This document shows, piece after piece, positions 1 through 38,862 of a stretch of 64,000 bases of DNA. The notes below the pieces were generated by a model. That model was given only the letters and a program-made list of their open reading frames with translations, ran no database searches and had not been told where the DNA came from. The position numbers and the translations under genes were made by a program. Location: positions 194,860-258,859 of the IMG/VR virus record IMGVR_UViG_3300032562_000003; one strand, given 5' to 3'. Within the stretch, counting starts at the first letter, position 1; each line of letters starts with the position of its first letter.

Positions 1-603
1 GAATGCATAGAATTTTATAAAAATAAGACATTAGGTAGGATCGAAAAATACTTGACCAAGTATAACACACAAGAAAAGGTTAGCAGTATTAACGGTGTTG
101 ACGTAAAGGACTATGCATATTACCTAAACAACATCGACTATTCTTATCTTACTGAGACAGTGCAAGCATCTTATATACACGGTGATTTGCAGTTTGATAA
201 TATCGTAATAGGTAAAGACTTCAAGCTCATCGATTGGCGCCCTGATTTTGCAGGTAATACCAACACCGGCGACATATATTATGACTTAGCAAAACTCGCC
301 GGCGGATTCATCATAAATTATAGTAAGATCAAAGAGAACAACTTCAAGGTTGATATTAAAAACAATCATGTTACTTTAGAGATTCCTTATATAGATAACC
401 ACGAACAGTATTTCACCCTATTAAAAAAGTTTGTGAATGAAAAACAGTTAGAGTGGAAGAAAGTGGAATTATTGATTCCTATTATATTTTGGAATATGTC
501 TCCATTACATACTAGTCCCTTCGACAAATTTCTCTGGTACTTAGGTATAAAATTGTTCCAAGAGTATGAAACTAAATACTCTAGCAATGAAGCAGTTTTA
601 TAG
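1..603 (+). CDS. APH/choline-kinase-like phosphotransferase (5' truncated by window)
   Basis: Frame is open from position 1 (ECIEFYKNKTLGRIEKYLTK...). Brenner motif HGDLQFDNI followed by LIDWR and YDLAKL. Confidence 0.7.
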   Translation, partial: ECIEFYKNKTLGRIEKYLTKYNTQEKVSSINGVDVKDYAYYLNNIDYSYLTETVQASYIHGDLQFDNIVIGKDFKLIDWRPDFAGNTNTGDIYYDLAKLAGGFIINYSKIKENNFKVDIKNNHVTLEIPYIDNHEQYFTLLKKFVNEKQLEWKKVELLIPIIFWNMSPLHTSPFDKFLWYLGIKLFQEYETKYSSNEAVL

Positions 604-1324
604 TCTAAGTCAATATCCTGGCAAAACCGGAACTTATTACTACAATTTGTTTTTTGATAAGTTTGGCATTGACGCAACCTATACGGCTTTAGCTTGTAAT
701 CCAAACGAGTTCGAAGATACTTTCAAGCACTTAACAAGCGATCATACTACATATGGTATTAGCGTGAGTATGCCATATAAGAACACTGTAACTTATCTGT
801 GTGATAATCTAGATAGTCTAGCACATAAGTATGGTATTTGCAATACCATAGCTGTGAATAATGGACATACCGTTGGCTACAATTGTGACATATACGGATT
901 GATGGGTATCATATCTGAGATTTCAATCGATGATAAGATTTTGATACTAGGTGACGGATCGATAGGACAGATGTTCTATCATTATCTCATCGAAAACGAT
1001 TATATGAATGTCAATATGTATAGCAGAAAAAACAACAACTGGCATGACAGACATGAACCGGCTGACATTATAATCAATTGTACTAGTTTAGGGACGAGTG
1101 AAGAGGCATCACCATTGCTATCAGTTCCTGATAAAACAAGATGCGTAATTGATCTAGCACTACGTAAAACTATTTTATATGAACAAAGTTTGCAGAGTCA
1201 AGTAAAGTATATAAGTGGTCTGAGTTTTTATGCCCATCAATTTCTAAAGCAGTTTGAGATATATACTGGTATGCATATCACGATTGATCAATTTAACGAG
1301 GCTACAGGAAATGATTATAGATAA
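587..1324 (+). CDS. Shikimate dehydrogenase (AroE)-like NAD(P)-dependent oxidoreductase
   Basis: Motifs GISVSMPYK, CNTI, GYNCD, ILGDGSIG, IINCTSLG and VIDL match the AroE layout. Likely ATG at 587. Confidence 0.75.
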   Translation: MKQFYSLSQYPGKTGTYYYNLFFDKFGIDATYTALACNPNEFEDTFKHLTSDHTTYGISVSMPYKNTVTYLCDNLDSLAHKYGICNTIAVNNGHTVGYNCDIYGLMGIISEISIDDKILILGDGSIGQMFYHYLIENDYMNVNMYSRKNNNWHDRHEPADIIINCTSLGTSEEASPLLSVPDKTRCVIDLALRKTILYEQSLQSQVKYISGLSFYAHQFLKQFEIYTGMHITIDQFNEATGNDYR

Positions 1325-1802
1325 ACTCATTATCGATGTTGATGGTGTATTAACATCCGGACACATGCTGTACAACAATTTAGGCAAAACTTTTAAAGTT
1401 TTCGGACCGCATGACAGAGATGGTCTCAAGCTGATCAGTAAGTATATAAATGATATCACTTTTATTACTGCGGATAAGACTGGATTTGACATCACTTACG
1501 CAAGAATTGTCACTGATTGGAAGTATCGGGATGATCAGTTAGTCTTAGTTCCGGAAGAATCTAGACTAGAATGGTTTATAGAAAATTGTAATTTCAACAC
1601 AACCGCATATATCGCAGATGGATATCATGATGCTGTTATATTAAAAAAAGTAGCTCTAGGCATCGCACCTAAGAGTGCTAGAATTGAAGCGAGAACTAGT
1701 GCTAAGTATGTGACACCGAGTGATGCTGCTAGCGGCGCAGTTCTTGATGCATGTTTATATATTGAAAAGATGATCAAAGGTTGGTGGTGGCGCCAACTAT
1801 AA
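1311..1802 (+). CDS. KdsC-like HAD phosphatase
   Basis: IIDVDGVLTSG, FKVFGPHDRDG, AYIADGYHD and SGAVLDAC motifs. ATG at 1311. Confidence 0.85.
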   Translation: MIIDKLIIDVDGVLTSGHMLYNNLGKTFKVFGPHDRDGLKLISKYINDITFITADKTGFDITYARIVTDWKYRDDQLVLVPEESRLEWFIENCNFNTTAYIADGYHDAVILKKVALGIAPKSARIEARTSAKYVTPSDAASGAVLDACLYIEKMIKGWWWRQL

Positions 1803-1822
1803 TCTATATGAAAGAATGATCG

Positions 1823-2827
1823 ATGGACTTGAAACGATTTAATTTAGGTATAGGTCCGATGAGCAAAGAAATAGTTGAGCTATGTCTCAGCTATAGTCAT
1901 CAGAACGACTATCCACTAATGATTATTGCTAGTCGCAATCAAGTAGACTATGATAGTGGCTATGCTATGAACACTAAAGAACTATCTGACCTAGTATTCA
2001 ATAGTGAGTATTATGACCGAGATAGAATATTGCTGTGTAGAGACCACTGCGGACCTTACTTTAGTGATGCAGACAAAAATCTAGACCTCGAAACGGTAAT
2101 AGAACGATGCATGAATACGATCAAAGCTGATGTCGATGCAAAATTCTACCTAATTCATATTGACGTGAGCAGAGTCGAGACTGACAAACAACGTGCTGTT
2201 GCAGAAAAGTTGTTTTCTTATGCTATGGCATTGAATCCGAAAATTATGTTTGAATTCGGTACCGAAGACAACACTGGTAATACGACAGAAACCTTGAACA
2301 TGTTGAATATGCAACTAGAGTATGTCAAGCCTTGGCAAAATAATATATGTTATATTGTTTCCCAGACTGGAAGCTTGACTAAACAAACTCAAGTAGGTAC
2401 GTTCAATGTAGAACAAACACAAAAACTGATAAATGTAATACATCAGAATGGTTACATGTTCAAAGAACACAACGCTGACTACCTTACAGTTGACCAAGTA
2501 AAGTTACGTAAAAATACAGGAGTGGATGCATTAAATATTGCTCCGCAACTCGGTACTGTAGCTAGTAGTGTGTTATATACATTGGGTTTGGGTACAAAAG
2601 AATTAACTAAGTTCATTGATGTTGTGATAGAATCAGGATATTATAAAAAATGGTGTACGGTTGATGTAGATAATGACAAAGACCGCTTTATCAGTTCAGC
2701 ACACTATCTATTCGAACATCCATGTTGTAAAGAATTAAAACAAGTAATAGATATGCGAGAATATAAAGCACTATTACAAGACCGATTGTTTTCTATTTTA
2801 GATGAATATAGATTAGGATACCATTAA
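1823..2827 (+). CDS. GatZ/KbaZ-like class II aldolase/epimerase family protein
   Basis: IIASRNQVD, RDHCGP, IHIDVS, EFGTED and KEHNADYL motifs. Confidence 0.7.
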   Translation: MDLKRFNLGIGPMSKEIVELCLSYSHQNDYPLMIIASRNQVDYDSGYAMNTKELSDLVFNSEYYDRDRILLCRDHCGPYFSDADKNLDLETVIERCMNTIKADVDAKFYLIHIDVSRVETDKQRAVAEKLFSYAMALNPKIMFEFGTEDNTGNTTETLNMLNMQLEYVKPWQNNICYIVSQTGSLTKQTQVGTFNVEQTQKLINVIHQNGYMFKEHNADYLTVDQVKLRKNTGVDALNIAPQLGTVASSVLYTLGLGTKELTKFIDVVIESGYYKKWCTVDVDNDKDRFISSAHYLFEHPCCKELKQVIDMREYKALLQDRLFSILDEYRLGYH

Positions 2828-2958: not shown

Positions 2959-4440
2959 ATGAATTATGTAGGTGTCAGTTGCGGGTTTCACGACGCTGGA
3001 TTGAGTGTCATTGATGATGCTGGCAATATCCTATACGCCGGCCACAGTGAACGATACAGTAAGAAGAAGCATGACGCTGATCTTTGTTTAGGCTTATTAA
3101 AAGATGCCCACAAATATATAGATGGGCATTATGAGCTTCATTATTATGAGAAGCCTTGGTTAAAGGTAATCCGCCAGCTCAGAGCTGGACAGAAGTTAGG
3201 ACCTTTCTCTGCAAAGGATGTCATCGGTAAAAACATGATGGTTCGTTTTAGCCATGACGGAGAAGTGAAAACACACAATCATCACTTATCTCATGCTGCT
3301 GCTGGTTTTCAAACTAGTCCATTTGACCATGCTACTGTAGTCATTATTGATGCTATCGGCGAGTTAGATACGATTACTATCTGGGATGCGTATTATGATG
3401 ATAACGGTAGAGCCGTATATAAGAGGCTTTGGGGAAAGCAATATCCAGATTCTATCGGTTTATTCTATTCTGCTATGACTGCGAAAGTAGGACTGAAGCC
3501 ATTAGATGAAGAATATATTCTTATGGGAATGGCTGCTTACGGTAAACCTATTCATGTTAATACGATTCAAAAAGCGTTGATTCATAATAGTGGTACATTA
3601 TCTTTCAAAGAAAATCTACATACCGGGGTGAGAGATGATTTCCTCAAAGATGCTGATAATATGGATATAGCTTCATCTACTCAAGAACTTACTGAAAGTT
3701 TGATACACCATGTCATAGCAAAAGCTATTAATATCGGTAAAAGTCATAATCTTGTTTTTGGTGGAGGAGTCGCACTCAACTGTGCAGCAAATCGTAATCT
3801 AGGCGGATACTTCGATAACATCTGGATCATGCCTAATCCGGGTGATGCAGGAAACTCATTGGGTGCTGCTGCATTAGGTTATGGAAAACGAGTAAATTGG
3901 GTCGATGCCTTTTTAGGATATAATATAAAAGGCAAATATCCTATTAACAATGTAATTAACCAATTGTATACTAAGAAGATGGTTGGTGTTGCTAGCGGAC
4001 GAGCCGAATTCGGTCCTAGAGCATTAGGCAATCGTTCACTATTAGCAGATCCACGCGGCCCTGATATAAAGGATACAGTAAATGAAATCAAGCGAAGACA
4101 GCAGTTCAGACCCTTTGCGCCGGTCATTCTGGAGGAACTATGTGGCGATTATTTTAATATGCCTTGCGGTTGGAACAACAGTAGGTATATGCAAGTCATC
4201 GCTCCTTGTAGGGCTCCTGACTTATTTCCTGCTATCGTTCACGCTGACGGGACTTCTCGTGTACAGACAGTACCGAAAGACGGTTCGGGAATCAGAAGAC
4301 TCTTAGAACGTTGGTATAATGAGACACGCTGTCCAATGCTACTTAATACATCCCTAAATATTAGAGGTGAGCCTATGGTAAATGACCGGGCAGATGCTGA
4401 TCGGTTCCAGCTACTATATGGGGTAAAAGTCTGCTCTTAA
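2959..4440 (+). CDS. Carbamoyltransferase (NodU/CmcH/TobZ family)
   Basis: GFHDA, HHLSHAA, IDAIGE, GGVALNC, EFGPRALGNRS, FRPFAP and LLNTSLN motifs. Confidence 0.92.
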   Translation: MNYVGVSCGFHDAGLSVIDDAGNILYAGHSERYSKKKHDADLCLGLLKDAHKYIDGHYELHYYEKPWLKVIRQLRAGQKLGPFSAKDVIGKNMMVRFSHDGEVKTHNHHLSHAAAGFQTSPFDHATVVIIDAIGELDTITIWDAYYDDNGRAVYKRLWGKQYPDSIGLFYSAMTAKVGLKPLDEEYILMGMAAYGKPIHVNTIQKALIHNSGTLSFKENLHTGVRDDFLKDADNMDIASSTQELTESLIHHVIAKAINIGKSHNLVFGGGVALNCAANRNLGGYFDNIWIMPNPGDAGNSLGAAALGYGKRVNWVDAFLGYNIKGKYPINNVINQLYTKKMVGVASGRAEFGPRALGNRSLLADPRGPDIKDTVNEIKRRQQFRPFAPVILEELCGDYFNMPCGWNNSRYMQVIAPCRAPDLFPAIVHADGTSRVQTVPKDGSGIRRLLERWYNETRCPMLLNTSLNIRGEPMVNDRADADRFQLLYGVKVCS

Positions 4441-4444
4441 AGCA

Positions 4445-4511
4445 TAAATAGATGTGAGTCGCGGGACTGCAATCCCCACTCACTCTAATGCTAGAAGGAG
4501 CTATCAGCATG
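4445..4511 (+). promoter_or_regulatory. Late promoter plus conserved structured leader of HNH gene (copy 1)
   Basis: TAAATA then GTGAGTCGC...CCCACTCACTCTAA...ATCAGCATG. GTGAGT pairs with ACTCAC. A near-identical layout occurs at 15265-15334 (-). Confidence 0.65.
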
Positions 4512-5171
4512 TCTATTTATCGTAAAATTTACGAACAGAATTTTGGTCCCATACCCAAAGACGGTGACGGAAGAAGTTGCGATGTTCATCATATAGATGG
4601 TAACCGCAATAATAATGTACCGGAAAATTTAATCGCATTGTCTATACAAGATCATTACGATATTCATTATCAGCAAGGAGATTATGGTGCATGTTGGCTC
4701 ATTTCAAGAAAGCTACGGTTGACGCCAGAGGAACTATCAGACCTCGCCAAATTAACCGGCGCCAACCGCATCGCAAACGGCACACATCACTTTTTAAAAA
4801 GGCCAGATGGGTCATCGTTAGGAAAAGACAGTGTACTCAGACAAACTGAAAACGGGACGAATGCTTTCTCTGGAGGAGAAGTTCAAAGAAAATCTAACGC
4901 TAAGCGAGTGAGGGAAGGAACTCACCATTTTCTTAGTGGTGATATACAAAGAAGAACTCAACAAAGGTTGGTGGAGAACGGGACTCATCATTTAATGGGG
5001 AACGGAGAATTTCAACGAAATGTTCAGAAAACATTGTTAGAGAATGGAACTCACCACTTTCTTACGAATCATCCAAATAAAATTCAGGTAACTTGTCCGC
5101 ATTGCAACAAAACTGGCGGAAAAACTAACATGCATCGATACCATTTCGATAAGTGTAGGGTCTTAAAATAA
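4509..5171 (+). CDS. HNH homing endonuclease with GTHHF repeats and C-terminal zinc-binding motif
   Basis: DVHHIDGNRNNNVPENL, five GT[HN]x[FL] repeats, and CPHC...HFDKC. ATG at 4509 follows AAGGAG. Confidence 0.88.
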   Translation: MSIYRKIYEQNFGPIPKDGDGRSCDVHHIDGNRNNNVPENLIALSIQDHYDIHYQQGDYGACWLISRKLRLTPEELSDLAKLTGANRIANGTHHFLKRPDGSSLGKDSVLRQTENGTNAFSGGEVQRKSNAKRVREGTHHFLSGDIQRRTQQRLVENGTHHLMGNGEFQRNVQKTLLENGTHHFLTNHPNKIQVTCPHCNKTGGKTNMHRYHFDKCRVLK

Positions 5172-5203: not shown

Positions 5204-7744
5204 ATGGCAATTAGAGAAGTATTCTACTCCGGTTCCAAACCCAATGTCCATCCAAGAGAAAAATTTGCTGAATCACTAGAAGATGCTAGGAATCAGTGTA
5301 CGACTGAGCATTTTTGGATTATCAACGAGTTTTGTGACTACCGTAAATTTGATTGGGACTTTGATTTCGAGCTATTACCTGACGAAGATATTTGGGCAGA
5401 GGCACACGACAATGTATGGCCTAGCCAACATCAAAAAGATAGTGGTACATGGCTGTGTCCTAAGGTAGCCGGTGATTATACTATCTATCGAACCGATGTT
5501 CCCCCAATTCAACGCAAGAATGAAATCAATGATTTTTGGATTATAGATCCGGCCCTGGATAAATCTAGGTTTGACTTTTCTTGGCACCCAGATCCTACGT
5601 CTCCTCCATACATATATCAATTCGGTACTCTGCTCGATGAAAACGACGGACCCAGATACGTCACTCCCTATAATGACGGAACCATAGTACATCTAGAACG
5701 CAAGGAGGTCATACTAGAAGACCTAGAGTTTTCGAAGTACTACATCACTACTACATTGGAAGATTTAATCAACGACCACACTAATGAAATCTTTTGGGCA
5801 TTGAATCCTGAAATTGATTATTCTGGGTTTGACTTTAAATGGGTCCCTGACAGTAAGAACGTATATCACATAAATGCATTTGGTACGAAAGACAATATAA
5901 ACTCCCAGACTTACTTTGTTAATGGTAAGATGTGGGCACGTGGTTATCGGGACATTAACTACATTGAGGATAAGGTACTAGATGTACGAACCAAGATCGA
6001 TATTTTCTTTGTCGATAAAGGAAATCCTCAGGCACAAGAACGCTTTCAGCAATTATCTGAGCGTATGGGCAACGTAACTAAAACTAGATATCTGAACAGC
6101 TGGGTTGACACGATCAATCGTTGTGTGACTAAATCAACTACCAATCTATGTTGGATTCTCAATAGTGAATTAGACTATTCGTCATTTGAGTTTGATTTCT
6201 ATCCTAGCCCATGGCAGATGAACTTAGTTCATGTGTTTGGAACTCAGTGGTCACACTGGGGAACAACCTTTATGGTTAACAAAAATACATTTGCTGATGA
6301 TACCAAATATATAAAAGTCATTGAGCATTTGCCTAATATAAATTTTGTAAAACGATCACCTGCTAAGGCAGTTGATTGTCTTTATGCTATAGTAATCATC
6401 GACCATGGTAACGGTGTTGATACAGTAAAAGATGATCTACTCAGTAAAAATCTGAGCGAAAGAAACATCATTGCTGTGAAATATGATACCAATTATCTAA
6501 AAACATTCAAGGAGGTACTCAGTAAATTAGATGTCAATCGTGAACATTATGTATGGATTTGTAGTAGCGTGTGTGATTATAGCAGATTTGATTTTAGCTA
6601 TATCTGCGATCCGTACACCAAAGAACAACTCCACGTCTTCCCGAGCGGTAATCAAAAATTAGGAGACACGTTTCTAGTAAACGTCAACAAGCTGCGCAAA
6701 TTGATAGCAGATATGCATCGTCTAGAAGACTATGAAAAGATTAATTATAATCAACATCAAGTTGTCTCAAGATTGATGACACCCACAACTATCGAAGGTG
6801 CATATTTTCCAAATGAAACACATATGGATTATGCTAGAAATTATGAATGGGATTTTCCTTATGTAACTCTAGTAACTGAAGAAAACTGGGATATGGATCC
6901 TGAAATTGATCCCGAACCTATGTGTCTTTGGTCACCCGAACAGAAAGCAATCATTATTTCTAGTACAGGTGCAACTAGAGTTACGATTCCTCGCGAGGCT
7001 AAAAACTATGTCAAAAGTGAACTGTATGATTACCCGTATATAAAGCGAGCAAAAAAACTAACCAAATCTAAACCGATGGACATAGTGTATCTCAGTAACG
7101 GTGAAGCCGGGGCCGAAAAAAACTGGGAGCATCTACTTCAAATTACTAAAAACATACCAAATAGGGTAGTCAGAGTGGATGGAGTTAATGGTCGAGTTGC
7201 TGCATATCATGCTGCTGCCGAAGCCAGCGAGACACCATGGTTATTTACGGTATTCGCTAAGTTACACATCAATTCTAATTTTGATTGGTCATGGCAACCA
7301 GATCGAATGCAAGCACCTAAGCATTATATCTTTCATGCGAAGAATCCGGTCAATGGATTGATCTACGGTCACCAAGCGATGATCGCGTATAATAAGCAAT
7401 TAGTGCTAGAGAATGACGGTTATGGACTAGACTTTACGTTGGATGACCTGCACGAAGTTGTTCCACTCATGTCCGGTACTGCAAACTATAACACTGATCC
7501 GTTCTCTACTTGGCGTACCGCATTCCGTGAAGTGGTCAAATTGAAGGCCGAAGATACCGACATTGCCCGAGAGCGATTAGAAGCTTGGCTTACTAAAGCT
7601 GAAGGTGATTTTGCAGAATATAGCATCAAGGGTGCAAAAGACGCAGAAGCCTATTACGATGAAGTTGATGGCGATTTTGATGCACTGCGATTGAGCTACG
7701 AGTGGGAATGGTTAAAATCACGCTTCGTGCAAAAATACGGTTGA
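5204..7744 (+). CDS. Large multi-module glycosyltransferase-like protein
   Basis: Recurring F[DE]FxWxPD/FDFSY modules. C-terminal GT-A-like region (DIVYLSNGE...RVDGVNGRVAAYHAAAEASETPW). Lies in a sugar-enzyme neighbourhood. Confidence 0.55.
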   Translation: MAIREVFYSGSKPNVHPREKFAESLEDARNQCTTEHFWIINEFCDYRKFDWDFDFELLPDEDIWAEAHDNVWPSQHQKDSGTWLCPKVAGDYTIYRTDVPPIQRKNEINDFWIIDPALDKSRFDFSWHPDPTSPPYIYQFGTLLDENDGPRYVTPYNDGTIVHLERKEVILEDLEFSKYYITTTLEDLINDHTNEIFWALNPEIDYSGFDFKWVPDSKNVYHINAFGTKDNINSQTYFVNGKMWARGYRDINYIEDKVLDVRTKIDIFFVDKGNPQAQERFQQLSERMGNVTKTRYLNSWVDTINRCVTKSTTNLCWILNSELDYSSFEFDFYPSPWQMNLVHVFGTQWSHWGTTFMVNKNTFADDTKYIKVIEHLPNINFVKRSPAKAVDCLYAIVIIDHGNGVDTVKDDLLSKNLSERNIIAVKYDTNYLKTFKEVLSKLDVNREHYVWICSSVCDYSRFDFSYICDPYTKEQLHVFPSGNQKLGDTFLVNVNKLRKLIADMHRLEDYEKINYNQHQVVSRLMTPTTIEGAYFPNETHMDYARNYEWDFPYVTLVTEENWDMDPEIDPEPMCLWSPEQKAIIISSTGATRVTIPREAKNYVKSELYDYPYIKRAKKLTKSKPMDIVYLSNGEAGAEKNWEHLLQITKNIPNRVVRVDGVNGRVAAYHAAAEASETPWLFTVFAKLHINSNFDWSWQPDRMQAPKHYIFHAKNPVNGLIYGHQAMIAYNKQLVLENDGYGLDFTLDDLHEVVPLMSGTANYNTDPFSTWRTAFREVVKLKAEDTDIARERLEAWLTKAEGDFAEYSIKGAKDAEAYYDEVDGDFDALRLSYEWEWLKSRFVQKYG

Positions 7745-7770
7745 CATGCAATGTCATATATGATTAAATA
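7741..7770 (+). promoter_or_regulatory. Promoter for tmRNA (sigma70-like overlapping late TAAATA)
   Basis: TTGACA (7741), 17-nt spacer, TTAAAT. TAAATA at 7765. Confidence 0.5.
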
Positions 7771-7775
7771 GTATT

Positions 7776-8105
7776 TGTTCGTTGATACGGACTTAAAACC
7801 GGGGAAGACAGGGGTGCGATTCCCCTCGCCTCCACCAGTAAACACACGATAACAGGACGCTGGCTCTGTGAAGCGGGATATCGGGGTAGCTGCCGAGAAG
7901 ACGGGGAGAGCATCGTGTGTTTTCTTATGGGGGCGTATAGTATCGATTCACGGCTAGTAGGAAAGTGGAGAACACGGTAAGAAACGACCGTCAATCAGTT
8001 CAAATTACTAAATGCAAACGAAAATGATGCATATGAAGGCCTTGCGTTAGCCGCATAAGTCTTTTGGGCTTTGCTAGTTGAGCCTCGAAACAGAATCAAC
8101 TAGCA
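7776..8105 (+). ncRNA. ssrA: Circularly permuted two-piece tmRNA, tag ANENDAYEGLALAA
   Basis: Acceptor piece comes first with T-arm GGGGTGCGATTCCCC and CGCCTCCACCA ending at 7837. Coding piece starts GGGGGCG at 7929 and pairs with CGCCTCC including the G3:U alanine determinant. Tag ORF 8014-8058 ends ALAA-stop. Terminal GCTAGTTGA/TCAACTAGC stem. Outer ends are approximate. Confidence 0.9.
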
Positions 8106-11610: not shown

Positions 11611-12711
11611 ATGTCTCGTGATATTGACACTCACACGATTACTTCTACTCAGGCCCGAAAGGCCATCCTCACTGCTTTCAAGGCAAAGCGTCCTGTCTTC
11701 CTCTGGGGTCCTCCGGGCATCGGCAAGTCGGAAGTCGTTCAGGAAATCACTGACGAACTCGGTGGTATCATGTTTGATCTGCGTATGGCGCAGATGGAAC
11801 CTACTGACATTCGCGGTATTCCCTTCTACAATAAGTACATCGGCAAGATGGATTGGGCTGAGCCCGTCGATCTGCCCAGTCAAGAAGTCGCCGATCAATA
11901 TCCGATCGTCGTTCTGTTCCTCGATGAAATGAACTCTGCTCCCCCTTCGGTGCAAGCTGCTGGCTATCAGCTGGTTCTGAACCGTCGAGTCGGTAAGTAC
12001 GTCCTCCCCGATAACGTCGTCATCGTTGCTGCTGGCAACCGTGACAGTGACAAGGGTGTCACGTATCGTATGCCCATGCCCCTTGCTAATCGCTTCGTTC
12101 ACCTCGAAATGAAGTATGATTTCGCTTCTTGGCAGATTTGGGCGGTCAACAAGAACATTCACAAGGACGTTGTCGGCTATCTGTCTTTCTCTAAGCAAGA
12201 CGGTTATGACTTCGACGCTAAGAGCTCCAGTCGAGCCTTCGCTACTCCTCGTTCTTGGACTTTCGTGAGCGATCTGCTCGTTGACGAACAAAACGTGGAT
12301 AACGATACTCTGTTCAATCTCGTTGCCGGCGCGATCGGTGATGGTCTCGCAACGAAGTTCATGGCTCACCGTCGAGTTGCTGGTCAGATGCCTGACCCGG
12401 CTGACATTCTTGAAGGTAGGGTCAAGGATCTTAAGGTCAAGGAAATCTCGGCTATGTACTCGTTGACGATCTCCATGTGCTATGAACTGAAGGACGCTCT
12501 CGAAAACAAGCGTGTGGACAACAAGAAGTTCCATGAAATGGGCAGCAACTTCATCGAATACATCATGAATAATTTCGAGACGGAACTGGTGGTCATGGGC
12601 GCTAAGATCGCCCTCAAGACTTACAAGCTGCCGCTTGAGCCCTCGCAACTGCGTAACTTTGATGAATTCTACAAGAAGTACGGCAAGTACATTGTAGAAG
12701 CTGGCAACTAA
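11611..12711 (+). CDS. MoxR-like AAA+ ATPase
   Basis: LWGPPGIGKS Walker A, LFLDEMN Walker B, AAGNR, LANRF. Adjacent to a vWA gene. Confidence 0.88.
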   Translation: MSRDIDTHTITSTQARKAILTAFKAKRPVFLWGPPGIGKSEVVQEITDELGGIMFDLRMAQMEPTDIRGIPFYNKYIGKMDWAEPVDLPSQEVADQYPIVVLFLDEMNSAPPSVQAAGYQLVLNRRVGKYVLPDNVVIVAAGNRDSDKGVTYRMPMPLANRFVHLEMKYDFASWQIWAVNKNIHKDVVGYLSFSKQDGYDFDAKSSSRAFATPRSWTFVSDLLVDEQNVDNDTLFNLVAGAIGDGLATKFMAHRRVAGQMPDPADILEGRVKDLKVKEISAMYSLTISMCYELKDALENKRVDNKKFHEMGSNFIEYIMNNFETELVVMGAKIALKTYKLPLEPSQLRNFDEFYKKYGKYIVEAGN

Positions 12712-12724
12712 GTCAGCGGCTCCT

Positions 12725-12758
12725 GGGGAGGGATTAGAGACAGTCCCTCCCCTTTTTT
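12725..12758 (+). terminator. Rho-independent terminator
   Basis: GGGGAGGGA/TCCCTCCCC stem followed by T6. Confidence 0.8.
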
Positions 12759-12826
12759 CTATTATCTATTGCATATCATGCCGCATTCTGTTATATTGTC
12801 TTATAACTTAATCAAAGGACACATTC

Positions 12827-14116
12827 ATGAGCGCCGTAATTACCCCTACTAAAAAGAGCAAGCGTACTCGCAGCAAGAAGTACGAAAATCTTATCGGTCC
12901 TATGGATCCTAAGATTGATGCTCAAGCCCGCGAACGTCTTGTTACGGCACGCATCGGTCTCCTTCTGCGTCATGCGTTTTTCGGCAACCTTGCTACTCGT
13001 CTTGCTCTTACTAATGCGGACGAATGGTGTCCGACTGCTGCGACCGACGGTCTGAGATTTTACTATAACTCTCGCTTCATCATGATGCTCAAGACGAAGG
13101 AAGTTGAATTCCTCGTTGGTCACGAAGTTCTGCACGTGGTCTACGATCACATGGGTCGTCGTGACAATCGTGATCCGGAAATCTGGAACATCGCTGATGA
13201 CTATGCAGTCAACGCAGACTTGAAGCGTCACCGCGTGGGCGAATTTATTACTACTGTGCCTTGCTTGTATGAGTCTAAGTACGAAAACTGGGCCGCAGAA
13301 GCCATCTACGATGACCTCATGAAGAATGTCAAGTACATCAATATTGAGGATCTCCTCGACAAGATGTTGGACGATCACGTTGACGGTGACGACGACGGCG
13401 ACGGCCGCGCAGGCGGCGACAAACCTGGCAAGGGCCGCCCCAAGCTTTCTCAGGAAGAAAAGGACCGCATTCGTCAAGAGGTCCGTCAAGCGGTAATCAA
13501 CGCTGCTTCTACGGCTGAGGCTGGCACTGTTCCGAAGGGCGTTGAACGCATGATCAAGCAACTGACTAGCCCGATCATGCCCTGGCGCGAATTGATCCAA
13601 ACTAATCTGACCTCTGCTATCAAGTCTGATTATACTTGGATGCGTCCTTCTCGTCGCAGCTGGCACATGGACGCTGTCATGCCCGGCATGAATCCTGGCG
13701 AAGAAATTGACGTTGACATTTATATCGACATGTCAGGTTCTATCTCGCAGAAGCAAGGTATGCAGTTTCTTTCGGAAGTTGCCGGCATGATGGATGCGTT
13801 CGATGGCTACAGCCTTCGGGTCTCGACATTCGACACTAAGGTCTATAACACTCAAGAATTTTCTTCTGAAAACATGGAAAACATTGAGGAGTATCAACTG
13901 TTCGGTGGCGGTGGCACTGACTTTGACTGCGTATTCGATGACCTTAAGGAAGCAGGACGAGTTCCGGCTCGTCTGATCGTCTTCACGGACGGGTATCCTT
14001 GCGGCAGCTGGGGCGATCAAAATTACTGTGATACGACTTGGATCATTCACGGTGACCCCGATCCTCACCCGCCCTTCGGTCAATGGGCCATTTATGATGA
14101 CCATCGCAAGTCCTAA
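12827..14116 (+). CDS. DUF2201-type putative metallopeptidase + vWA domain protein
   Basis: TAATDG, HEVLH (HExxH), MIDAS motif IDMSGS, TFDT, GGGGTDF and VFTDGY. Confidence 0.85.
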   Translation: MSAVITPTKKSKRTRSKKYENLIGPMDPKIDAQARERLVTARIGLLLRHAFFGNLATRLALTNADEWCPTAATDGLRFYYNSRFIMMLKTKEVEFLVGHEVLHVVYDHMGRRDNRDPEIWNIADDYAVNADLKRHRVGEFITTVPCLYESKYENWAAEAIYDDLMKNVKYINIEDLLDKMLDDHVDGDDDGDGRAGGDKPGKGRPKLSQEEKDRIRQEVRQAVINAASTAEAGTVPKGVERMIKQLTSPIMPWRELIQTNLTSAIKSDYTWMRPSRRSWHMDAVMPGMNPGEEIDVDIYIDMSGSISQKQGMQFLSEVAGMMDAFDGYSLRVSTFDTKVYNTQEFSSENMENIEEYQLFGGGGTDFDCVFDDLKEAGRVPARLIVFTDGYPCGSWGDQNYCDTTWIIHGDPDPHPPFGQWAIYDDHRKS

Positions 14117-14398: not shown

Positions 14399-14636
14399 CG
14401 ACATTAACATAAATCAGTGGTTCATGGACCGAGAATTAAGTCATACCCCTGAACATTTTATAAGATCAAGCACTCCTTTTACTATCGAGTCGCGCATGTG
14501 GATTTTGGAAAGCCTTCAAGGCAGATTTTCTACACATTACCCCAACACATCGACCTATATTATGAATAGAATAGCACTTTGTCCATCGTTTGAAGATCCA
14601 CAAGAAGCAGTGTTTTACGAACTCAAGTGGGGCTAG
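14385..14636 (+). CDS. Small hypothetical protein, FxxExDxxxFxL[RK]W-like family
   Basis: GTG start. C-terminus FEDPQEAVFYELKWG. Confidence 0.6.
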   Translation: MKTIDDININQWFMDRELSHTPEHFIRSSTPFTIESRMWILESLQGRFSTHYPNTSTYIMNRIALCPSFEDPQEAVFYELKWG

Positions 14637-15267
14637 GTCTTACTAGTTCCCACCCTCCAGTAGCGTTAAGTCCTTTGTTATTTACAATACGACTAATTGC
14701 ACCGGACTTGAGATTATAACATGTCCTTAATTGATAATTCGTCATTGATACTACCTCCCCGGTCATACGATTTTTCCAAGTTCTAACAGTATGGTCATAC
14801 TGCGGATGTTTTTCTTTTTTCTTGGGGTCATTAACAAAATGATGAGTCCCGGCAGCAAGTCTGTTTAATTGTCGTTTACTGGCAGCTTCCCTGTCCAACC
14901 AATTATGTGTTCCATTAAGAATGCGGTCTCTGTTTAGTTGCGCTTGGTGCTTGTTGGGCCCAACCCAAGGATGCTTGCCCGTTTTAACTAGCTTGTTAGC
15001 ATTTTTTGTTGCGAGGGCTACTAGCTCATCGGGAAGTAAGTTGATCCTACTTGACATTTTTACACAAGCTGCCCAATCACCCTGTGAATAATGAATGTTG
15101 TAATGTTCTTGTATAGATACACATTTCAAGTTAGCAGGATTATTATTGGAATGATTTCCGTCTATATGATGTATTTCATATGACCGACCCGACTCTTCCT
15201 TAGGAATTGGACCGTAGTGATGTTCATAGATATTACGGTACTTGTTTGTACCACAATAAATACACAT
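14623..15267 (-). CDS. HNH homing endonuclease, paralog of 4509-5171
   Basis: YGPIPKEESGRSYEIHHIDGNHSNNNPANL, three G[TK]H[HNP][FW] repeats and a different C-terminal region. Inserted antisense to its neighbours. Confidence 0.88.
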   Translation of the reverse strand: MCIYCGTNKYRNIYEHHYGPIPKEESGRSYEIHHIDGNHSNNNPANLKCVSIQEHYNIHYSQGDWAACVKMSSRINLLPDELVALATKNANKLVKTGKHPWVGPNKHQAQLNRDRILNGTHNWLDREAASKRQLNRLAAGTHHFVNDPKKKEKHPQYDHTVRTWKNRMTGEVVSMTNYQLRTCYNLKSGAISRIVNNKGLNATGGWELVRPSPT

Positions 15268-16111: not shown

Positions 16112-16408
16112 ATGTCCCCTGAATTTATTCAAAAATGGGAGCGGTTAATTGAAGGTGTTGACAAGCAGACCTTTCCGTTACAGTTTGTCAAGAAGCTAAT
16201 ATTACGTTTACGCGGTAAAAAGCAACAGACAATTAATATTGCTAAGCTATTGGGTCAAGGAGTTGCTCCTGAGGAAATCGAAGAAGTGATAAGCAGAAAA
16301 CTTATCGAACTTGGCGATGATGTGCTTAGTATTGAGTTTATGTTAGATATACAAAGCATAGCAGAAACTGTTCAGCCTGAAACAGATAAACTATTGAATG
16401 GATTATGA
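16112..16408 (+). CDS. Hypothetical protein
   Basis: 98-aa ORF after TAAATA at 16105, with ATGA overlap into the DHFR gene. Confidence 0.65.
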   Translation: MSPEFIQKWERLIEGVDKQTFPLQFVKKLILRLRGKKQQTINIAKLLGQGVAPEEIEEVISRKLIELGDDVLSIEFMLDIQSIAETVQPETDKLLNGL

Positions 16409-16869
16409 AACTCAGTATTGCAGCGGACCCCAACGGTGGAATAGGATATAAAAACAGATTGCCCTGGATTAAACTTCAGGGCGATTTGCCAAGATTTAAG
16501 TATTTAACCGATAACCAAACCGTAATTATGGGAAGAAACACCTGGGATAGTCTTCCTATAAAACCGTTGTACAATAGGCACAATATAGTAGTTTCAAGTC
16601 AAACGTTTACCATGCCTGAAAAATCGGAATGCATTACATACGCTGCCCTAATAAAAAACATGTCATCATTTGATGACGCATGGCTCATCGGAGGTGCTCA
16701 GCTTGTAAATGCATGTTGGGATTACGTAACCGAAGTTTATTTGTCTAAGACCTTTGCCCAATACGATTGTGATAAATTCATTGATTTGTTATACTTAACA
16801 GATCATTATTATATATTAGACAGCGATGTATTTCCTGACCATGAGTATCAAATTTGGAAGCGTAAATGA
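16405..16869 (+). CDS. folA: Dihydrofolate reductase
   Basis: GGIGYKNRLPW, IMGRNTWDSLP, LIGGAQ and CDKF. Directly upstream of thyA. Confidence 0.93.
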   Translation: MKLSIAADPNGGIGYKNRLPWIKLQGDLPRFKYLTDNQTVIMGRNTWDSLPIKPLYNRHNIVVSSQTFTMPEKSECITYAALIKNMSSFDDAWLIGGAQLVNACWDYVTEVYLSKTFAQYDCDKFIDLLYLTDHYYILDSDVFPDHEYQIWKRK

Positions 16870-17759
16870 AAGAATACTTAAACCTATTACAGGACATTTT
16901 AGATAATGGTGAATTACGAAATGACCGCACTGGTGTAGGCACGATCAGTGTTTTCGGGCGCCAACTTCGCTTTGACTTGTCAAAAGGATTTCCGGCAGTA
17001 ACGACAAAGAAACTTGCGTGGAACGCATGTAAGTCTGAATTACTTTGGTTTTTAGAAGGAAGTAATGATGAACGAAGGTTATGTGAGATTCTACACGATA
17101 CCAGAGAGTCAGGGTATAACACGATCTGGACAGGAAATGCTCAAGCAACTTACTGGGCAGATAAAAAGAGACACGTCGGAGACCTTGGACGAGTATACGG
17201 AGTCCAGTGGCGGCACTGGAGAACACCGCCGGATTACATCTACGAACACGGAGACTTGCATGTCTCAAGTGGTCCAATTGCAGAAGTTGACCAAATAAAG
17301 AATCTAATCGAAGGCATCAAGAAAGACCCCAATGGTCGTCGCCACATCCTATCGGCGTGGAACGTAGGTGAATTAGATCAAATGGCACTTCCTCCGTGTC
17401 ACGTTATGAGCCAGTACTATGTCAGTACGGGCAGAAAGCTAAGCTGTCATATGTACCAAAGGAGTGTGGATGTCTTTTTAGGCCTTCCCTTTAACATCGC
17501 AAGTTACGCTCTACTAACTAGCATGATTGCGCATGTATGTGATCTGGAAGTAGGAGAGTTGATAATCTCTACTGGTGATACTCATATCTATCAAAATCAT
17601 GTGGAACAAGTTAAGGAGCAGTTGTTAAGAGAACCGTATGCTTCTCCCATTCTTTATCTGAATCCAGATGTAAAAGATATTGACAAATTTACAATGGATG
17701 ATATAGTGTTAGATGACTACATCAGCCACAGTACCATAAAGGCCGTTATGGCTGTATGA
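16866..17759 (+). CDS. thyA: Thymidylate synthase
   Basis: DRTGVGT, GRVYGVQWR, MALPPCH and YQRSVDVFLGLPFNIASY. Confidence 0.97.
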   Translation: MKEYLNLLQDILDNGELRNDRTGVGTISVFGRQLRFDLSKGFPAVTTKKLAWNACKSELLWFLEGSNDERRLCEILHDTRESGYNTIWTGNAQATYWADKKRHVGDLGRVYGVQWRHWRTPPDYIYEHGDLHVSSGPIAEVDQIKNLIEGIKKDPNGRRHILSAWNVGELDQMALPPCHVMSQYYVSTGRKLSCHMYQRSVDVFLGLPFNIASYALLTSMIAHVCDLEVGELIISTGDTHIYQNHVEQVKEQLLREPYASPILYLNPDVKDIDKFTMDDIVLDDYISHSTIKAVMAV

Positions 17760-37838: not shown

Positions 37839-37865
37839 ATACATATGGCTAAGGCAGGAGTATTC

Positions 37866-38786: not shown

Positions 38787-38862
38787 TAAACCTGACGAAG
38801 TGTTCAATCTCCACATTGAAAATGATCATAATTACATAGTTGACGGTGCAGTAGTATCCAAC
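38758..38862 (+). other. Split intein C-fragment (35 aa)
   Basis: MKLIRKTEIDKPDEVFNLHIENDHNYIVDGAVVSN followed by Cys(+1). Block F VFNLHIENDHNY. Confidence 0.88.

What the first reader, a model, noticed from the sequence alone, without database searches (positions are those of the whole stretch)
1..2827. Phage-borne four-enzyme pathway: kinase, AroE-like reductase, KdsC-like phosphatase and GatZ/KbaZ-like enzyme
Seen: four closely packed ORFs with these motif sets, followed by a carbamoyltransferase and a GT-like gene. Established: GatZ/KbaZ-family proteins include hexose-6-phosphate C4-epimerases, and the AroE fold is an NAD(P)H reductase. Inference: the AroE-like protein is not doing shikimate chemistry. 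The cluster may make an unusual activated sugar or alditol phosphate for decorating virion proteins, DNA or the host surface.
Basis: partly seen in the sequence, partly recalled or inferred. Interest (0 to 1): 0.6.

Follow-up and report, generated by a model that had tools for sequence, protein, structure and literature searches.

The report
Phage cassette for an unusual activated sugar
A T4-like jumbo phage carries a tightly conserved set of enzymes that most likely turns a common sugar phosphate into a rare, probably carbamoylated, nucleotide-activated sugar for glycosyltransferases encoded next to it; the same enzyme set sits in a marine bacterium's surface-polysaccharide locus, and neither the sugar nor its target is known.

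Summary
Window 1-603 is the kinase half of a 530-aa fusion of a nucleotidyltransferase and an APH-type kinase that starts upstream. A PMI-type cupin precedes the fusion. The gene order cupin, fusion, AroE-like, KdsC-like HAD, short GatZ-like, carbamoyltransferase recurs in seven divergent jumbo-phage lineages (46-80% identity). A minimal version (HAD, fusion, GatZ-like, cupin) occurs in a marine virus and a Woesearchaeota MAG. The version with AroE occurs in a SAR86 genome, inside a polysaccharide locus with Wzx, GtrA, GT2 and NeuB.

The fusion is homologous over both domains to Thanatos TH1_060, the homolog of RB69 gp52:53 and AfhE (hhalign 97.8%). That enzyme works with a HAD phosphatase to make UDP-arabinose. 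The GatZ-like protein keeps all four catalytic and zinc residues of the E. coli GatZ F6P 4-epimerase. The AroE-like protein keeps the Lys/Asp dyad but fails the AroE equivalog cut-off and lacks carboxylate-binding residues.

The surrounding island has no membrane proteins and holds several GT-A-fold proteins and two SGNH proteins. About 315 kb holds one TS homolog, a bona fide one beside DHFR, and no SIS isomerase, so DNA glycosylation is unsupported. Product and acceptor remain unknown. I rate this a new variant of a known activation logic.

The parts
1..603 (+). C-terminal (APH-type kinase) part of a 530-aa fusion of a sugar-1-phosphate nucleotidyltransferase and an anomeric kinase. The full ORF is G000:C1:193870-195462 and starts 990 nt upstream of the window.
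   Evidence: NTP_transf_3, Arch_glmU 9e-18, HddC 6e-10 in the N-terminal half; APH/TCAD9 in the C-terminal half; invariant GxGSR...K loop, HGDxxxxN and DWR motifs; hhalign 97.8%, E 1e-12, over both domains to Thanatos TH1_060.
566..1324 (+). AroE-fold (shikimate dehydrogenase superfamily) NAD(P)-dependent oxidoreductase, divergent subfamily. The conserved start is probably the ATG at 587.
   Evidence: PF08501 met; the TIGR00507 cut-off is not met. K65, N86, D102 and Q244 are kept. Y215 is lost, the HSxSP loop is replaced, and 19 aa of the NADP domain are deleted.
1311..1802 (+). KdsC/YrbI-type HAD phosphatase. The ORF is open from the TTG at 1254; the conserved start is the ATG at 1311, overlapping the AroE-like stop by 14 nt.
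   Evidence: TIGR01670 3e-15, KDN-9-P phosphatase 2e-11, both below cut-off; invariant DxDG motif I and the GPHDxDG, ADGxxDA and GIAP blocks. 45% identity to the SAR86 and Woesearchaeota copies.
1823..2827 (+). Short-form (334 aa) GatZ/KbaZ-like class II aldolase-fold enzyme; probable ketose-phosphate 4-epimerase or aldolase.
   Evidence: PF08013 met. D87, H88, E171 and H257 (E. coli GatZ numbering) are invariant. PMC11907403 names exactly these residues as the catalytic Asp and the Zn ligands of GatZ F6P 4-epimerase.
2959..4440 (+). NodU/CmcH-family O-carbamoyltransferase.
   Evidence: Carbam_trans_N 5e-32, Carbam_trans_C 2e-46, phrog_1601 3e-91. Found directly after the GatZ-like gene in 6 of 7 phage lineages.
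4488..5171 (+). HNH_3 homing-type endonuclease inserted between the carbamoyltransferase and the 846-aa gene; not part of the pathway.
   Evidence: Absent at this position in L005 and L011, present in L048.
5204..7744 (+). 846-aa virus-only protein. The N-terminal ~600 aa contain internal repeats. The C-terminal 222 aa (7076-7744) form a GT-A-fold domain that is a paralog of the upstream 313-aa protein but lacks the DxD motif.
   Evidence: no family, only viral relatives; repeats and paralogy; model pLDDT 89. GT-A glycosyltransferases, Z 9.6-11.7 over about 135 aa. F-A-K in place of DxD.

Best explanation
The window's first genes are the downstream half of a conserved phage cassette that makes a nucleotide-activated rare sugar. 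The cassette sits in a roughly 17-kb island of soluble glycan-assembly enzymes.

Proposed route; each step is inferred from family membership unless marked otherwise:

1. The short GatZ-like enzyme remodels a central ketose phosphate by zinc-dependent retro-aldol/aldol chemistry. The model reaction is fructose-6-P to tagatose-6-P.
2. The PMI-type cupin isomerises the ketose phosphate to an aldose phosphate.
3. The AroE-fold enzyme adds an NAD(P)-dependent keto/hydroxyl redox step on the sugar, not on shikimate.
4. The kinase domain of the fusion phosphorylates the anomeric carbon, giving a 1,omega-bisphosphate.
5. The KdsC-type HAD removes the terminal phosphate.
6. The nucleotidyltransferase domain makes the NDP-sugar.

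Steps 4 to 6 copy the experimentally described phage UDP-arabinose route (AfhE/AfhF) and the GmhA/HldE/GmhB/HldC heptose logic.

The NodU-type enzyme then O-carbamoylates the sugar, before or after transfer. GT-A-fold proteins encoded alongside transfer it: three DUF7796-like paralogs, the 313-aa protein and perhaps the 846-aa protein. Two SGNH proteins and a radical-SAM enzyme tailor the glycan further.

No island protein has a membrane segment, so the acceptor in the phage is most likely cytoplasmic. I think phage structural proteins are the likeliest acceptor. My single best guess for the sugar is a talose- or tagatose-derived hexose, held with low confidence.
For: **Shown by tools**

- Architecture and intact catalytic motifs of the fusion.
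- Homology of both fusion domains to Thanatos TH1_060 (tblastn 2e-8; locus tag; hhalign 97.8%).
- GatZ-like protein keeps D87, H88, E171 and H257.
- The cupin carries the PMI type II signature blocks. Its SAR86 and Woesearchaeota orthologs pass the PF01050 cut-off at 35.2 and 30.4 bits against 23.6.
- HAD motifs are intact.
- Gene order is conserved in seven phage lineages at 46-80% GatZ identity.
- A minimal four-gene module occurs in Marine virus AG-345-E15 and a Woesearchaeota MAG. A five-gene module occurs in a SAR86 polysaccharide locus.
- GT-A fold for the DUF7796-like protein (Foldseek E 1e-6 to GT6/GT8).
- GT-A fold for the 846-aa C-terminal domain (Z up to 11.7). Its paralog u313 keeps DxD.
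- The DUF6071 proteins carry GDS...H SGNH blocks.
- No transmembrane segment in any of 25 island proteins.

**From papers**

- TH1_060 is a homolog of RB69 ORF052_053c (PMC12838424).
- RB69 gp52:53 and AfhE act as a bifunctional Ara5P kinase and UDP-Ara pyrophosphorylase together with a HAD phosphatase (PMC13326640, section 27).
- E. coli GatZ and KbaZ are F6P-to-T6P 4-epimerases that use exactly these four residues (PMC11907403).
- A solved SDH-family sugar reductase exists: 5-ketofructose reductase, 7cok, matched at 1e-4.
Against: - No enzyme was assayed. The substrate, the order of steps, the nucleotide used and the product are all inferred.
- The GatZ-like family differs from GatZ at the secondary signature positions (E44 to I, K279 to N, the C20 region deleted). 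It may therefore use another ketose phosphate or act as an aldolase.
- The HAD is absent from three of the seven phage lineages. In two of these a SnoaL-like gene lies nearby instead. Either step 5 is supplied from elsewhere or the scheme is incomplete.
- AroE is absent from the minimal modules, so its step is accessory and its position in the route is a guess.
- The window's own cupin only equals the Pfam cut-off (23.6 bits).
- The GT-A assignments rest on predicted models with TM-scores of about 0.35-0.5, and the 846-aa domain lacks DxD.
- Nothing identifies the acceptor. Soluble GTs can also act on lipid-linked intermediates at the inner face of the membrane.
Confidence: 0.62

Rival explanations
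1. DNA hypermodification. The NDP-sugar is transferred to a hydroxylated pyrimidine in phage DNA, as in RB69, DLP3 and Thanatos, to evade restriction and CRISPR.
For: The only characterised relatives of the fusion belong to DNA-arabosylation clusters of T4-like phages. The acceptor must be cytoplasmic.
Against: - Roughly 315 kb of this phage (G000 plus the overlapping G002) holds a single thymidylate-synthase homolog. It scores 346 bits and sits directly after DHFR, as a true td/frd pair. No second, hydroxylase-type homolog was found.
- No SIS arabinose-5-P isomerase is present.
- The transferases beside the cassette are GT-A-like, not the GT-B enzymes tabulated for RB69 and DLP3.
- The cellular counterpart sits in a polysaccharide locus.
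- About 10% of the genome is unseen.
Confidence: 0.1
2. Alditol-phosphate donor route. The AroE-like enzyme reduces the ketose phosphate to an alditol phosphate. The fusion then works like LicA/LicC (kinase plus cytidylyltransferase) to give a CDP-alditol for a teichoic-acid-like decoration.
For: Structure searches reported in PMC13326640 relate the fusion's homologs to CTP:phosphocholine cytidylyltransferase and choline kinase. A reductase next to a nucleotidyltransferase recalls the CDP-ribitol and CDP-glucitol routes; that comparison is from my own knowledge and was not tested here.
Against: - It leaves the PMI-type cupin and the phosphatase without a role.
- The minimal modules lack AroE altogether yet keep cupin, HAD and GatZ-like.
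- The best NCBIfam matches of the transferase domain are sugar-1-phosphate enzymes: GlmU-like, AglF and HddC.
Confidence: 0.12
3. Same chemistry, different target. The NDP-sugar is fed into the host's envelope glycan machinery during infection, to alter LPS or capsule (superinfection exclusion, receptor masking).
For: The cellular copy of the module is in a Wzx/GtrA/GT2 surface-polysaccharide locus. Soluble GTs commonly act on undecaprenyl-linked intermediates (own knowledge). The phage carries further sugar-nucleotide genes, an SDR plus DegT, at window 18467-20462.
Against: None of the 25 phage proteins checked across the island and its flanks is a flippase, polymerase, polyprenyl-phosphate GT or GT-C, or has any membrane segment. 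This differs from the SAR86 locus. The phage has a T4-like lytic gene set.
Confidence: 0.13
4. Unrelated auxiliary metabolic genes that happen to be neighbours: a normal shikimate dehydrogenase, a tagatose-catabolism subunit and a KDO phosphatase.
For: Each gene's best database label, taken alone.
Against: - All three fail their equivalog cut-offs by wide margins: 100.6 against 200.2, 50.3 against 568.8, and 56.4 against 106.95 bits.
- Their order is conserved across phage lineages, a bacterium and an archaeon.
- The ORFs overlap or abut.
Confidence: 0.03

Closest known systems
Phage UDP-arabinose pathway: AfhE (bifunctional Ara5P 1-kinase / UDP-Ara pyrophosphorylase), AfhF (HAD phosphatase) and arabinose-5-P isomerase; RB69 gp52:53, gp51, gp55; Thanatos TH1_060 (PMC13326640, PMC12838424)
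   Same: - The same fused architecture, nucleotidyltransferase at the N terminus and APH-type kinase at the C terminus, with detectable homology across both domains.
- The same partner set: an isomerase plus a HAD phosphatase.
- The same setting, a T4-like phage.
   Different: - The isomerase is a PMI-type cupin, not an SIS domain.
- The HAD is KdsC-type.
- GatZ-like, AroE-like and carbamoyltransferase genes are added, so the sugar is not arabinose.
- No 5hoC or 5hmC synthase was found, and the neighbours are GT-A rather than GT-B.
- Identity to TH1_060 is only about 22-24%.
Nucleotide-heptose pathway GmhA / HldE (or HddA) / GmhB / HldC (or HddC)
   Same: The same four-step logic: ketose-omega-P, aldose-omega-P, 1,omega-bisphosphate, aldose-1-P, NDP-sugar. 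The transferase domain matches HddC at 6e-10.
   Different: All four proteins come from other families or subfamilies: cupin instead of SIS, APH-type instead of PfkB/GHMP kinase, and KdsC-type instead of GmhB-type HAD. This comparison is from established knowledge of the pathway and was not tested here beyond the HddC match.
E. coli GatZ/KbaZ fructose-6-P to tagatose-6-P 4-epimerases (PMC11907403)
   Same: Pfam family PF08013. The catalytic Asp87 and the Zn ligands His88, Glu171 and His257 are invariant.
   Different: - 334 aa against 420 aa, with two helical insertions missing.
- E44 to I, K279 to N, and the C20 segment deleted.
- It fails the TIGR02810 cut-off.
- It lies in a biosynthetic rather than a catabolic PTS context.
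Shikimate dehydrogenase superfamily members that do not act on shikimate, for example 5-ketofructose reductase (PDB 7cok), and SdhL-type proteins (PDB 1npy)
   Same: AroE fold with the Lys/Asp dyad. 7cok is a sugar-ketone reductase in this family. 1npy and the PRK12550 model are among the better matches.
   Different: The match to 7cok is weak (1e-4). The phage forms have a truncated NADP domain and their own N-terminal S-x-S-x-x-P-G motif, shared with the SAR86 copy. Their substrate is unknown.
NodU/NolO/CmcH/TobZ O-carbamoyltransferases and the phage 'Nol-like carbamoyltransferase' (phrog_1601)
   Same: Both Pfam domains at full length.
   Different: Here the enzyme is fixed next to a sugar-activation cassette, which gives this phage auxiliary gene a candidate substrate. 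NodU equivalog score is 122 bits against a cut-off of 1000.

Membership tests
Shikimate dehydrogenase AroE (equivalog TIGR00507) | Score at or above the curated equivalog cut-off | tested here: not met
   100.6 bits against a cut-off of 200.2.
Shikimate dehydrogenase AroE (equivalog TIGR00507) | Catalytic Lys65/Asp102 dyad with Asn86 and Gln244 (E. coli numbering) | tested here: met
   Invariant in all phage copies and the SAR86 copy when aligned with E. coli AroE.
Shikimate dehydrogenase AroE (equivalog TIGR00507) | Shikimate carboxylate-binding residues (HSxSP loop Ser14/Ser16, Tyr215). The role of these residues is recalled from the literature, not taken from a tool. | tested here: not met
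   Tyr215 is replaced by L, M, I or V. The HSxSP loop is replaced by S-x-S-x-x-P-G-x-x-G. MAFFT and HMMER disagree on whether one Ser or Thr is retained.
Shikimate dehydrogenase superfamily (Pfam PF08501) | Pfam gathering score | tested here: met
   51.7 bits against 27.
GatZ/KbaZ-like (Pfam PF08013) ketose-phosphate 4-epimerases | Pfam gathering score | tested here: met
   60.2 bits against 26.7. The TIGR02810 equivalog is not met: 50.3 against 568.8.
GatZ/KbaZ-like (Pfam PF08013) ketose-phosphate 4-epimerases | Catalytic Asp87 and Zn ligands His88, Glu171 and His257 (PMC11907403) | tested here: met
   All four are invariant columns in alignment A4 and in 17 family members.
GatZ/KbaZ-like (Pfam PF08013) ketose-phosphate 4-epimerases | Family-specific residues Cys20, Glu44 and Lys279 (PMC11907403) | tested here: not met
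   The Cys20 segment is deleted, Glu44 aligns with Ile, and Lys279 aligns with an invariant Asn.
AfhE / RB69 gp52:53-type bifunctional sugar kinase and NDP-sugar pyrophosphorylase | N-terminal nucleotidyltransferase fused to a C-terminal APH-type kinase, with sequence homology across both | tested here: met
   hhalign 97.8%, E 1e-12, columns 16-430 against TH1_060. phrog_4098 at 4e-15 over residues 16-442.
AfhE / RB69 gp52:53-type bifunctional sugar kinase and NDP-sugar pyrophosphorylase | Anomeric phosphorylation of a sugar-omega-phosphate and UTP-dependent activation | not testable with these tools
   Needs an enzyme assay.
Phage DNA arabinosylation (5hoC-Ara) system | Thymidylate-synthase-homolog pyrimidine hydroxylase or hydroxymethylase in addition to, or instead of, td | tested here: not met
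   One TS homolog only, in G000 and in G002. It scores 346 bits and is adjacent to DHFR. About 10% of the genome was not seen.
Phage DNA arabinosylation (5hoC-Ara) system | SIS-type arabinose-5-phosphate isomerase | tested here: not met
   No PF01380 match in G000 or G002; the control genomes all matched.
KdsC / YrbI KDO-8-P phosphatase (TIGR01670) | Curated cut-off | tested here: not met
   56.4 bits against 106.95. The HAD motif I DxDG and downstream motifs are present. It is therefore a HAD of the KdsC-like C0 type with unknown substrate.
Type II phosphomannose isomerase cupin (Pfam PF01050) | Pfam gathering score and metal/signature blocks | tested here: inconclusive
   The window genome's cupin scores 23.6, equal to the cut-off. 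Module orthologs in SAR86 and Woesearchaeota score 35.2 and 30.4. The (K/R)xWG, SxQxH...E and H blocks are invariant.
NodU/CmcH carbamoyltransferase (PF02543 + PF16861) | Both domains above gathering score | tested here: met
   112.2 and 158.1 bits.
GT-A fold glycosyltransferases | Rossmann-like GT-A fold | tested here: met
   DUF7796-like model: Foldseek E 8e-7 to 1e-5 to GT6 and GT8 enzymes. 846-aa C-terminal model (pLDDT 89): Z 9.6-11.7 over about 135 aa.
GT-A fold glycosyltransferases | DxD metal/nucleotide-sugar motif | tested here: inconclusive
   Present in the 313-aa paralog and the stand-alone paralogs (DGD, DSD, DAD). Replaced by F-A-K in the 846-aa protein and its orthologs. Not mapped for the DUF7796-like proteins.

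The most novel reading that the evidence does not exclude
A clade of roughly 350-kb T4-like phages builds a previously undescribed, O-carbamoylated rare sugar entirely with its own soluble enzymes. The sugar would be, for example, a talose- or tagatose-derived hexose made through a new AroE-fold sugar oxidoreductase and a short GatZ-type epimerase. The phages attach it to their own virion proteins with a new family of viral GT-A transferases. The same unknown sugar would be a component of the surface polysaccharides of uncultured marine bacteria such as SAR86 and of DPANN archaea.
Probability: 0.3. Interest if true: 0.75.

Novelty: new variant of a known kind. Interest (0 to 1): 0.6.

Why it matters
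- **New functions for familiar folds.** It would assign a function to three widely mislabelled gene families: 'shikimate dehydrogenase', 'tagatose-bisphosphate aldolase subunit' and 'KDO phosphatase' in viral and marine metagenomes. The short GatZ-like family alone has about 2,000 detectable members. It would also assign a function to the common phage 'Nol-like carbamoyltransferase'.
- **A wider role for the AfhE-type fusion.** The fusion is so far tied to DNA arabinosylation. This cassette shows it as a general sugar-activation device found in phages, bacteria and archaea.
- **A directly testable pathway.** Five small soluble enzymes and defined candidate substrates should yield a probably new nucleotide sugar.
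- **Virion glycosylation.** If the acceptor is the virion, this would be a self-sufficient virion-glycosylation system in tailed phages with giant-virus-like complexity.

Tried and rejected
- **Cultured-phage hits.** tblastn hits for the GatZ-like and AroE-like proteins in 'Listeria', 'Salmonella', 'Escherichia' and similar 'phage' records look like host-type DNA. The Listeria GatZ-like ORF is full length at 422 aa, two hits are bacterial genome records annotated with the ordinary enzymes, and the Listeria locus held no other cassette gene. I set them aside.
- **GTDB cellular hits.** Twenty-one of 24 carry 398-462-aa or fragmentary GatZ-like genes without any cassette neighbour, and one shows no ORF hit at all. 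Only the SAR86 and Woesearchaeota loci carry the module.
- **Unknown island families.** Profile searches of the DUF7796-like and DUF6071 alignments against PDB sequences gave only chance hits. No paper mentions these DUFs.
- **The 846-aa protein as a whole.** No Pfam or PDB sequence match, and the Atlas returns only viral hypotheticals.
- **Promoter and terminator scan.** Counts were not above the shuffled expectation, so the scan gives no operon evidence either way.
- **Reach of the genome searches.** The TS protein is not on record by exact look-up. The 340-350-kb relatives reached through the look-up of encoding contigs could not be searched whole, so the absence of a pyrimidine hydroxylase is shown only for this phage's roughly 315 kb.
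- **The 'moraphage' paper (PMC12619734).** I checked it and could not tie it to this lineage.
- **Literature search.** Searching for the gene combination found nothing relevant.

Full report
**What is in the sequence**

The window is the last 64 kb of a 258,859-bp IMG/VR viral record that is estimated 73% complete. It carries the following T4-type genes, so 'phage-borne' is correct:

- large terminase
- gp32-like protein
- UvsX/RecA
- an intein-interrupted UvsW-like helicase
- a gp41-type helicase
- a primase-like Toprim protein
- RNA ligase 1
- gp15

A NodU-type carbamoyltransferase follows at 2959-4440.

**Corrections to the observation**

I fetched 15 kb upstream (L002). This showed that window 1-603 is only the last 200 residues of a 530-aa ORF.

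- Its N-terminal half is a sugar-1-phosphate nucleotidyltransferase: Arch_glmU 9e-18, AglF 2e-13, HddC 6e-10, with the GxGSR...K loop invariant.
- Its C-terminal half is an APH-type kinase with invariant HGDxxxxN and DWR motifs.

A 149-aa cupin with type II phosphomannose-isomerase signature blocks lies just before it. Relatives show that the HAD starts at the ATG at 1311, overlapping the AroE-like stop by 14 nt.

**Co-conservation**

The short GatZ-like protein has about 2,000 detectable relatives of 320-366 aa, almost all from metagenomes. I examined the context of seven divergent phage lineages with 46-80% GatZ identity. These are L005, L011, L014, L015, L016, L048 and the P0113 contig, several of them on 340-351-kb contigs.

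- All seven have the order cupin, (0-2 small genes), fusion, AroE-like, GatZ-like.
- Six of seven have the carbamoyltransferase directly after.
- Four of seven have the HAD between the AroE-like and GatZ-like genes.
- In two of the lineages without the HAD (L015, L016), a SnoaL-like gene lies between the fusion and the AroE-like gene.

A scan of one genome per prokaryote species found 24 loci encoding relatives. Twenty-two of them show no cassette neighbour and mostly carry ordinary ~400-460-aa GatZ-like genes. The other two carry the module:

- A Woesearchaeota MAG has HAD, fusion, GatZ-like, cupin.
- A 110-kb contig of a SAR86 single-cell genome has AroE-like, HAD, fusion, GatZ-like, cupin.

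Marine virus AG-345-E15 has the fusion directly followed by the GatZ-like gene. HAD domains, a bona fide PMI cupin (1e-29), a DUF7796 protein, a second cupin related to the cassette's, and a carbamoyltransferase lie nearby.

In SAR86 the module is flanked by a Wzx-type flippase, a TylF O-methyltransferase, a GtrA-like protein, a GT2, a methyltransferase, NeuB and an epimerase/dehydratase. That is a surface-polysaccharide locus. The Woesearchaeota neighbours include a fusion of an NTP-transferase and a GHMP kinase, a GDP-mannose dehydratase and a GT9.

**The individual enzymes**

- **Fusion.** tblastn finds Shewanella phage Thanatos-1 TH1_060 (2e-8, 78% of the query). A profile of eight cassette fusions aligns to it over both domains (hhalign 97.8%, E 1e-12).
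  - TH1_060 is reported as 53% identical to RB69 ORF052_053c (PMC12838424).
  - PMC13326640 summarises that the HY126 homolog AfhE phosphorylates arabinose-5-P to the 1,5-bisphosphate.
  - The HAD enzyme AfhF then removes the 5-phosphate, and the N-terminal domain of AfhE makes UDP-arabinose.
- **GatZ-like.** Aligned with E. coli GatZ, the phage family keeps D87, H88, E171 and H257 invariant.
  - PMC11907403 shows that GatZ and KbaZ epimerise F6P to T6P, and names exactly these residues as the catalytic Asp and the Zn ligands.
  - The phage family lacks two helical insertions and the C20 segment, and has Ile for E44 and Asn for K279. The chemistry is probably retained, but the substrate may differ.
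- **AroE-like.** It passes the Pfam superfamily threshold but fails the AroE equivalog cut-off.
  - It keeps K65, N86, D102 and Q244.
  - It replaces Y215, has a different N-terminal loop that is shared with the SAR86 copy, and in phages deletes 19 residues after the NRT-like motif.
  - A solved member of this superfamily, 5-ketofructose reductase (7cok), reduces a sugar ketone.
  - The inference that this enzyme acts on a sugar and not on shikimate rests on these residue changes plus the invariant sugar-enzyme context. It has not been assayed.
- **HAD.** It is KdsC-like and scores below the cut-off, with all HAD motifs intact. From established knowledge, characterised members of that subfamily remove the terminal phosphate of 8- and 9-carbon sugar acids.

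**The surrounding island**

The same relatives also conserve a set of genes upstream of the cassette, at L002 6209-13465:

- a 313-aa protein
- a twitch-domain radical-SAM enzyme (NF033640, 1e-102)
- three paralogous DUF7796-like proteins
- two DUF6071 proteins with GDS...H SGNH blocks
- a 267-aa unknown protein

A model of one DUF7796-like protein (pLDDT 69.5, pTM 0.77) matches retaining GT-A glycosyltransferases of families GT6 and GT8 (E 8e-7 to 3e-5).

The C-terminal 222 aa of the 846-aa protein are paralogous to the 313-aa protein and to stand-alone proteins in L015 and L016. The model of this domain (pLDDT 89) aligns to GT-A enzymes at Z 9.6-11.7 over about 135 residues. The matches include the PBCV-1 capsid glycosyltransferase A64R, STIV A197, Mimivirus R699, SpsA and WrtF. 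The paralogs keep a DxD motif. The 846-aa protein and its orthologs have F-A-K there, so that domain may be inactive or metal-independent.

None of 25 island proteins has a predicted membrane segment, apart from a borderline N-terminal stretch in DUF6152.

**Target**

- **DNA is disfavoured.** G000 plus the overlapping contig G002, which extends about 56 kb further, cover roughly 315 kb. They contain a single TS homolog, which scores 346 bits and immediately follows DHFR. From established biochemistry, DHFR is needed only by a reductive thymidylate synthase. No SIS isomerase is present.
- **Host envelope is not excluded.** Soluble GTs can work on lipid-linked intermediates. However, the phage island lacks every membrane component that the SAR86 locus has.
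- **A cytoplasmic protein acceptor is my preferred reading.** The likeliest acceptors are virion proteins. Collar-domain and Peptidase_G2 tail-fibre-like genes lie just upstream. This is inference only.

**Mechanism I commit to**

1. The GatZ-like enzyme remodels a ketose phosphate.
2. The cupin isomerises it to an aldose phosphate.
3. The AroE-like enzyme adds an accessory redox step.
4. The kinase domain adds the anomeric phosphate.
5. The HAD removes the terminal phosphate.
6. The transferase domain makes the NDP-sugar.
7. The sugar is O-carbamoylated and then transferred by the GT-A-like proteins.

Homology and conserved catalytic residues support the reaction classes. The order of steps, the substrate and the product are inferred. 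If the model reactions hold (F6P to T6P, then a PMI-type isomerisation), the aldose would be talose-configured. I hold that guess at about 0.15-0.2.

**Novelty**

The activation logic is known from the AfhE/AfhF route and from nucleotide-heptose biosynthesis. The combination with a short GatZ-type enzyme, an AroE-fold enzyme, a PMI cupin, a KdsC-type HAD and a carbamoyltransferase is not described in the literature I could search. Its presence in phages, a bacterium and an archaeon is likewise undescribed there. I rate it a new variant of a known kind, with interest 0.6.

Noticed in passing
window 7737-8104 (+): A permuted (two-piece) tmRNA gene lies directly after the 846-aa gene. Rfam tmRNA_permuted scores 113.8 bits and alpha_tmRNA 78.2 bits. 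The ARAGORN tag peptide is ANENDAYEGLALAA. It is conserved at the same place in the 80%-identity relative (L005 18370-18763), but it is not within 10 kb of the cassette in more distant lineages. The alphaproteobacterial type may hint at the host.
   Followed up: partly
L002 10186-11010 (= G000:C1:190186-191010, upstream of the window): The third DUF7796-like (GT-A-like) paralog is cut by a single AAA-to-TAA nonsense change at nt 340 in this genome and in three near-identical contigs (L004, L008, L009). It is an intact 274-aa ORF in L003 and in the 80% relatives. This is a natural on/off polymorphism in a putative glycosyltransferase.
   Followed up: partly
window 4488-5171 (+) and 14623-15267 (-): Two HNH_3 homing-type endonuclease genes. 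The first is inserted between the carbamoyltransferase and the 846-aa gene. It is absent there in L005 and L011 but present at the same junction in the distant lineage L048.
   Followed up: partly
window 36813-39594 (+): A UvsW-like helicase appears interrupted. ORF 36813-37838 has UvsW_N/ResIII followed by a Hint/intein N-terminal splicing domain. ORF 37845-38786 has no family. ORF 38758-39594 carries Helicase_C. This may be an intein with an embedded or degraded homing endonuclease, or a split gene.
   Followed up: no
window 18467-20462 (+), 22668-23372 (+): A second sugar-nucleotide tailoring set lies 16 kb downstream: an SDR epimerase/dehydratase and a DegT-type aminotransferase, with a class I methyltransferase nearby. 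The relative L011 has two SDRs, DegT and a PglD-like acetyltransferase right after its 903-aa homolog of the 846-aa gene.
   Followed up: no
window 11611-14116 (+): A MoxR-type AAA ATPase is followed by a DUF2201 metallopeptidase/VWA protein, in the most GC-rich patch of the window (0.50 against about 0.40).
   Followed up: no
window 16405-17759 (+): A DHFR gene is immediately followed (4-nt overlap) by a full-length thymidylate synthase (346 bits), as in the T4 frd-td pair. It is the only TS homolog in about 315 kb.
   Followed up: yes
window 5204-7075 (+); L005 12659-17611: The N-terminal ~600 aa of the 846-aa protein consist of internal repeats. The ortholog in the 80% relative is expanded to 1650 aa by more copies of the same repeats. 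In L015 and L016 the GT-A-like domain occurs as separate 224-245-aa proteins.
   Followed up: partly
L015 11236-15579; L016 16054-20996: Distant relatives carry four consecutive radical-SAM genes just downstream of the cassette. This genome has one twitch-domain radical-SAM gene upstream, at L002 7154-8551.
   Followed up: no
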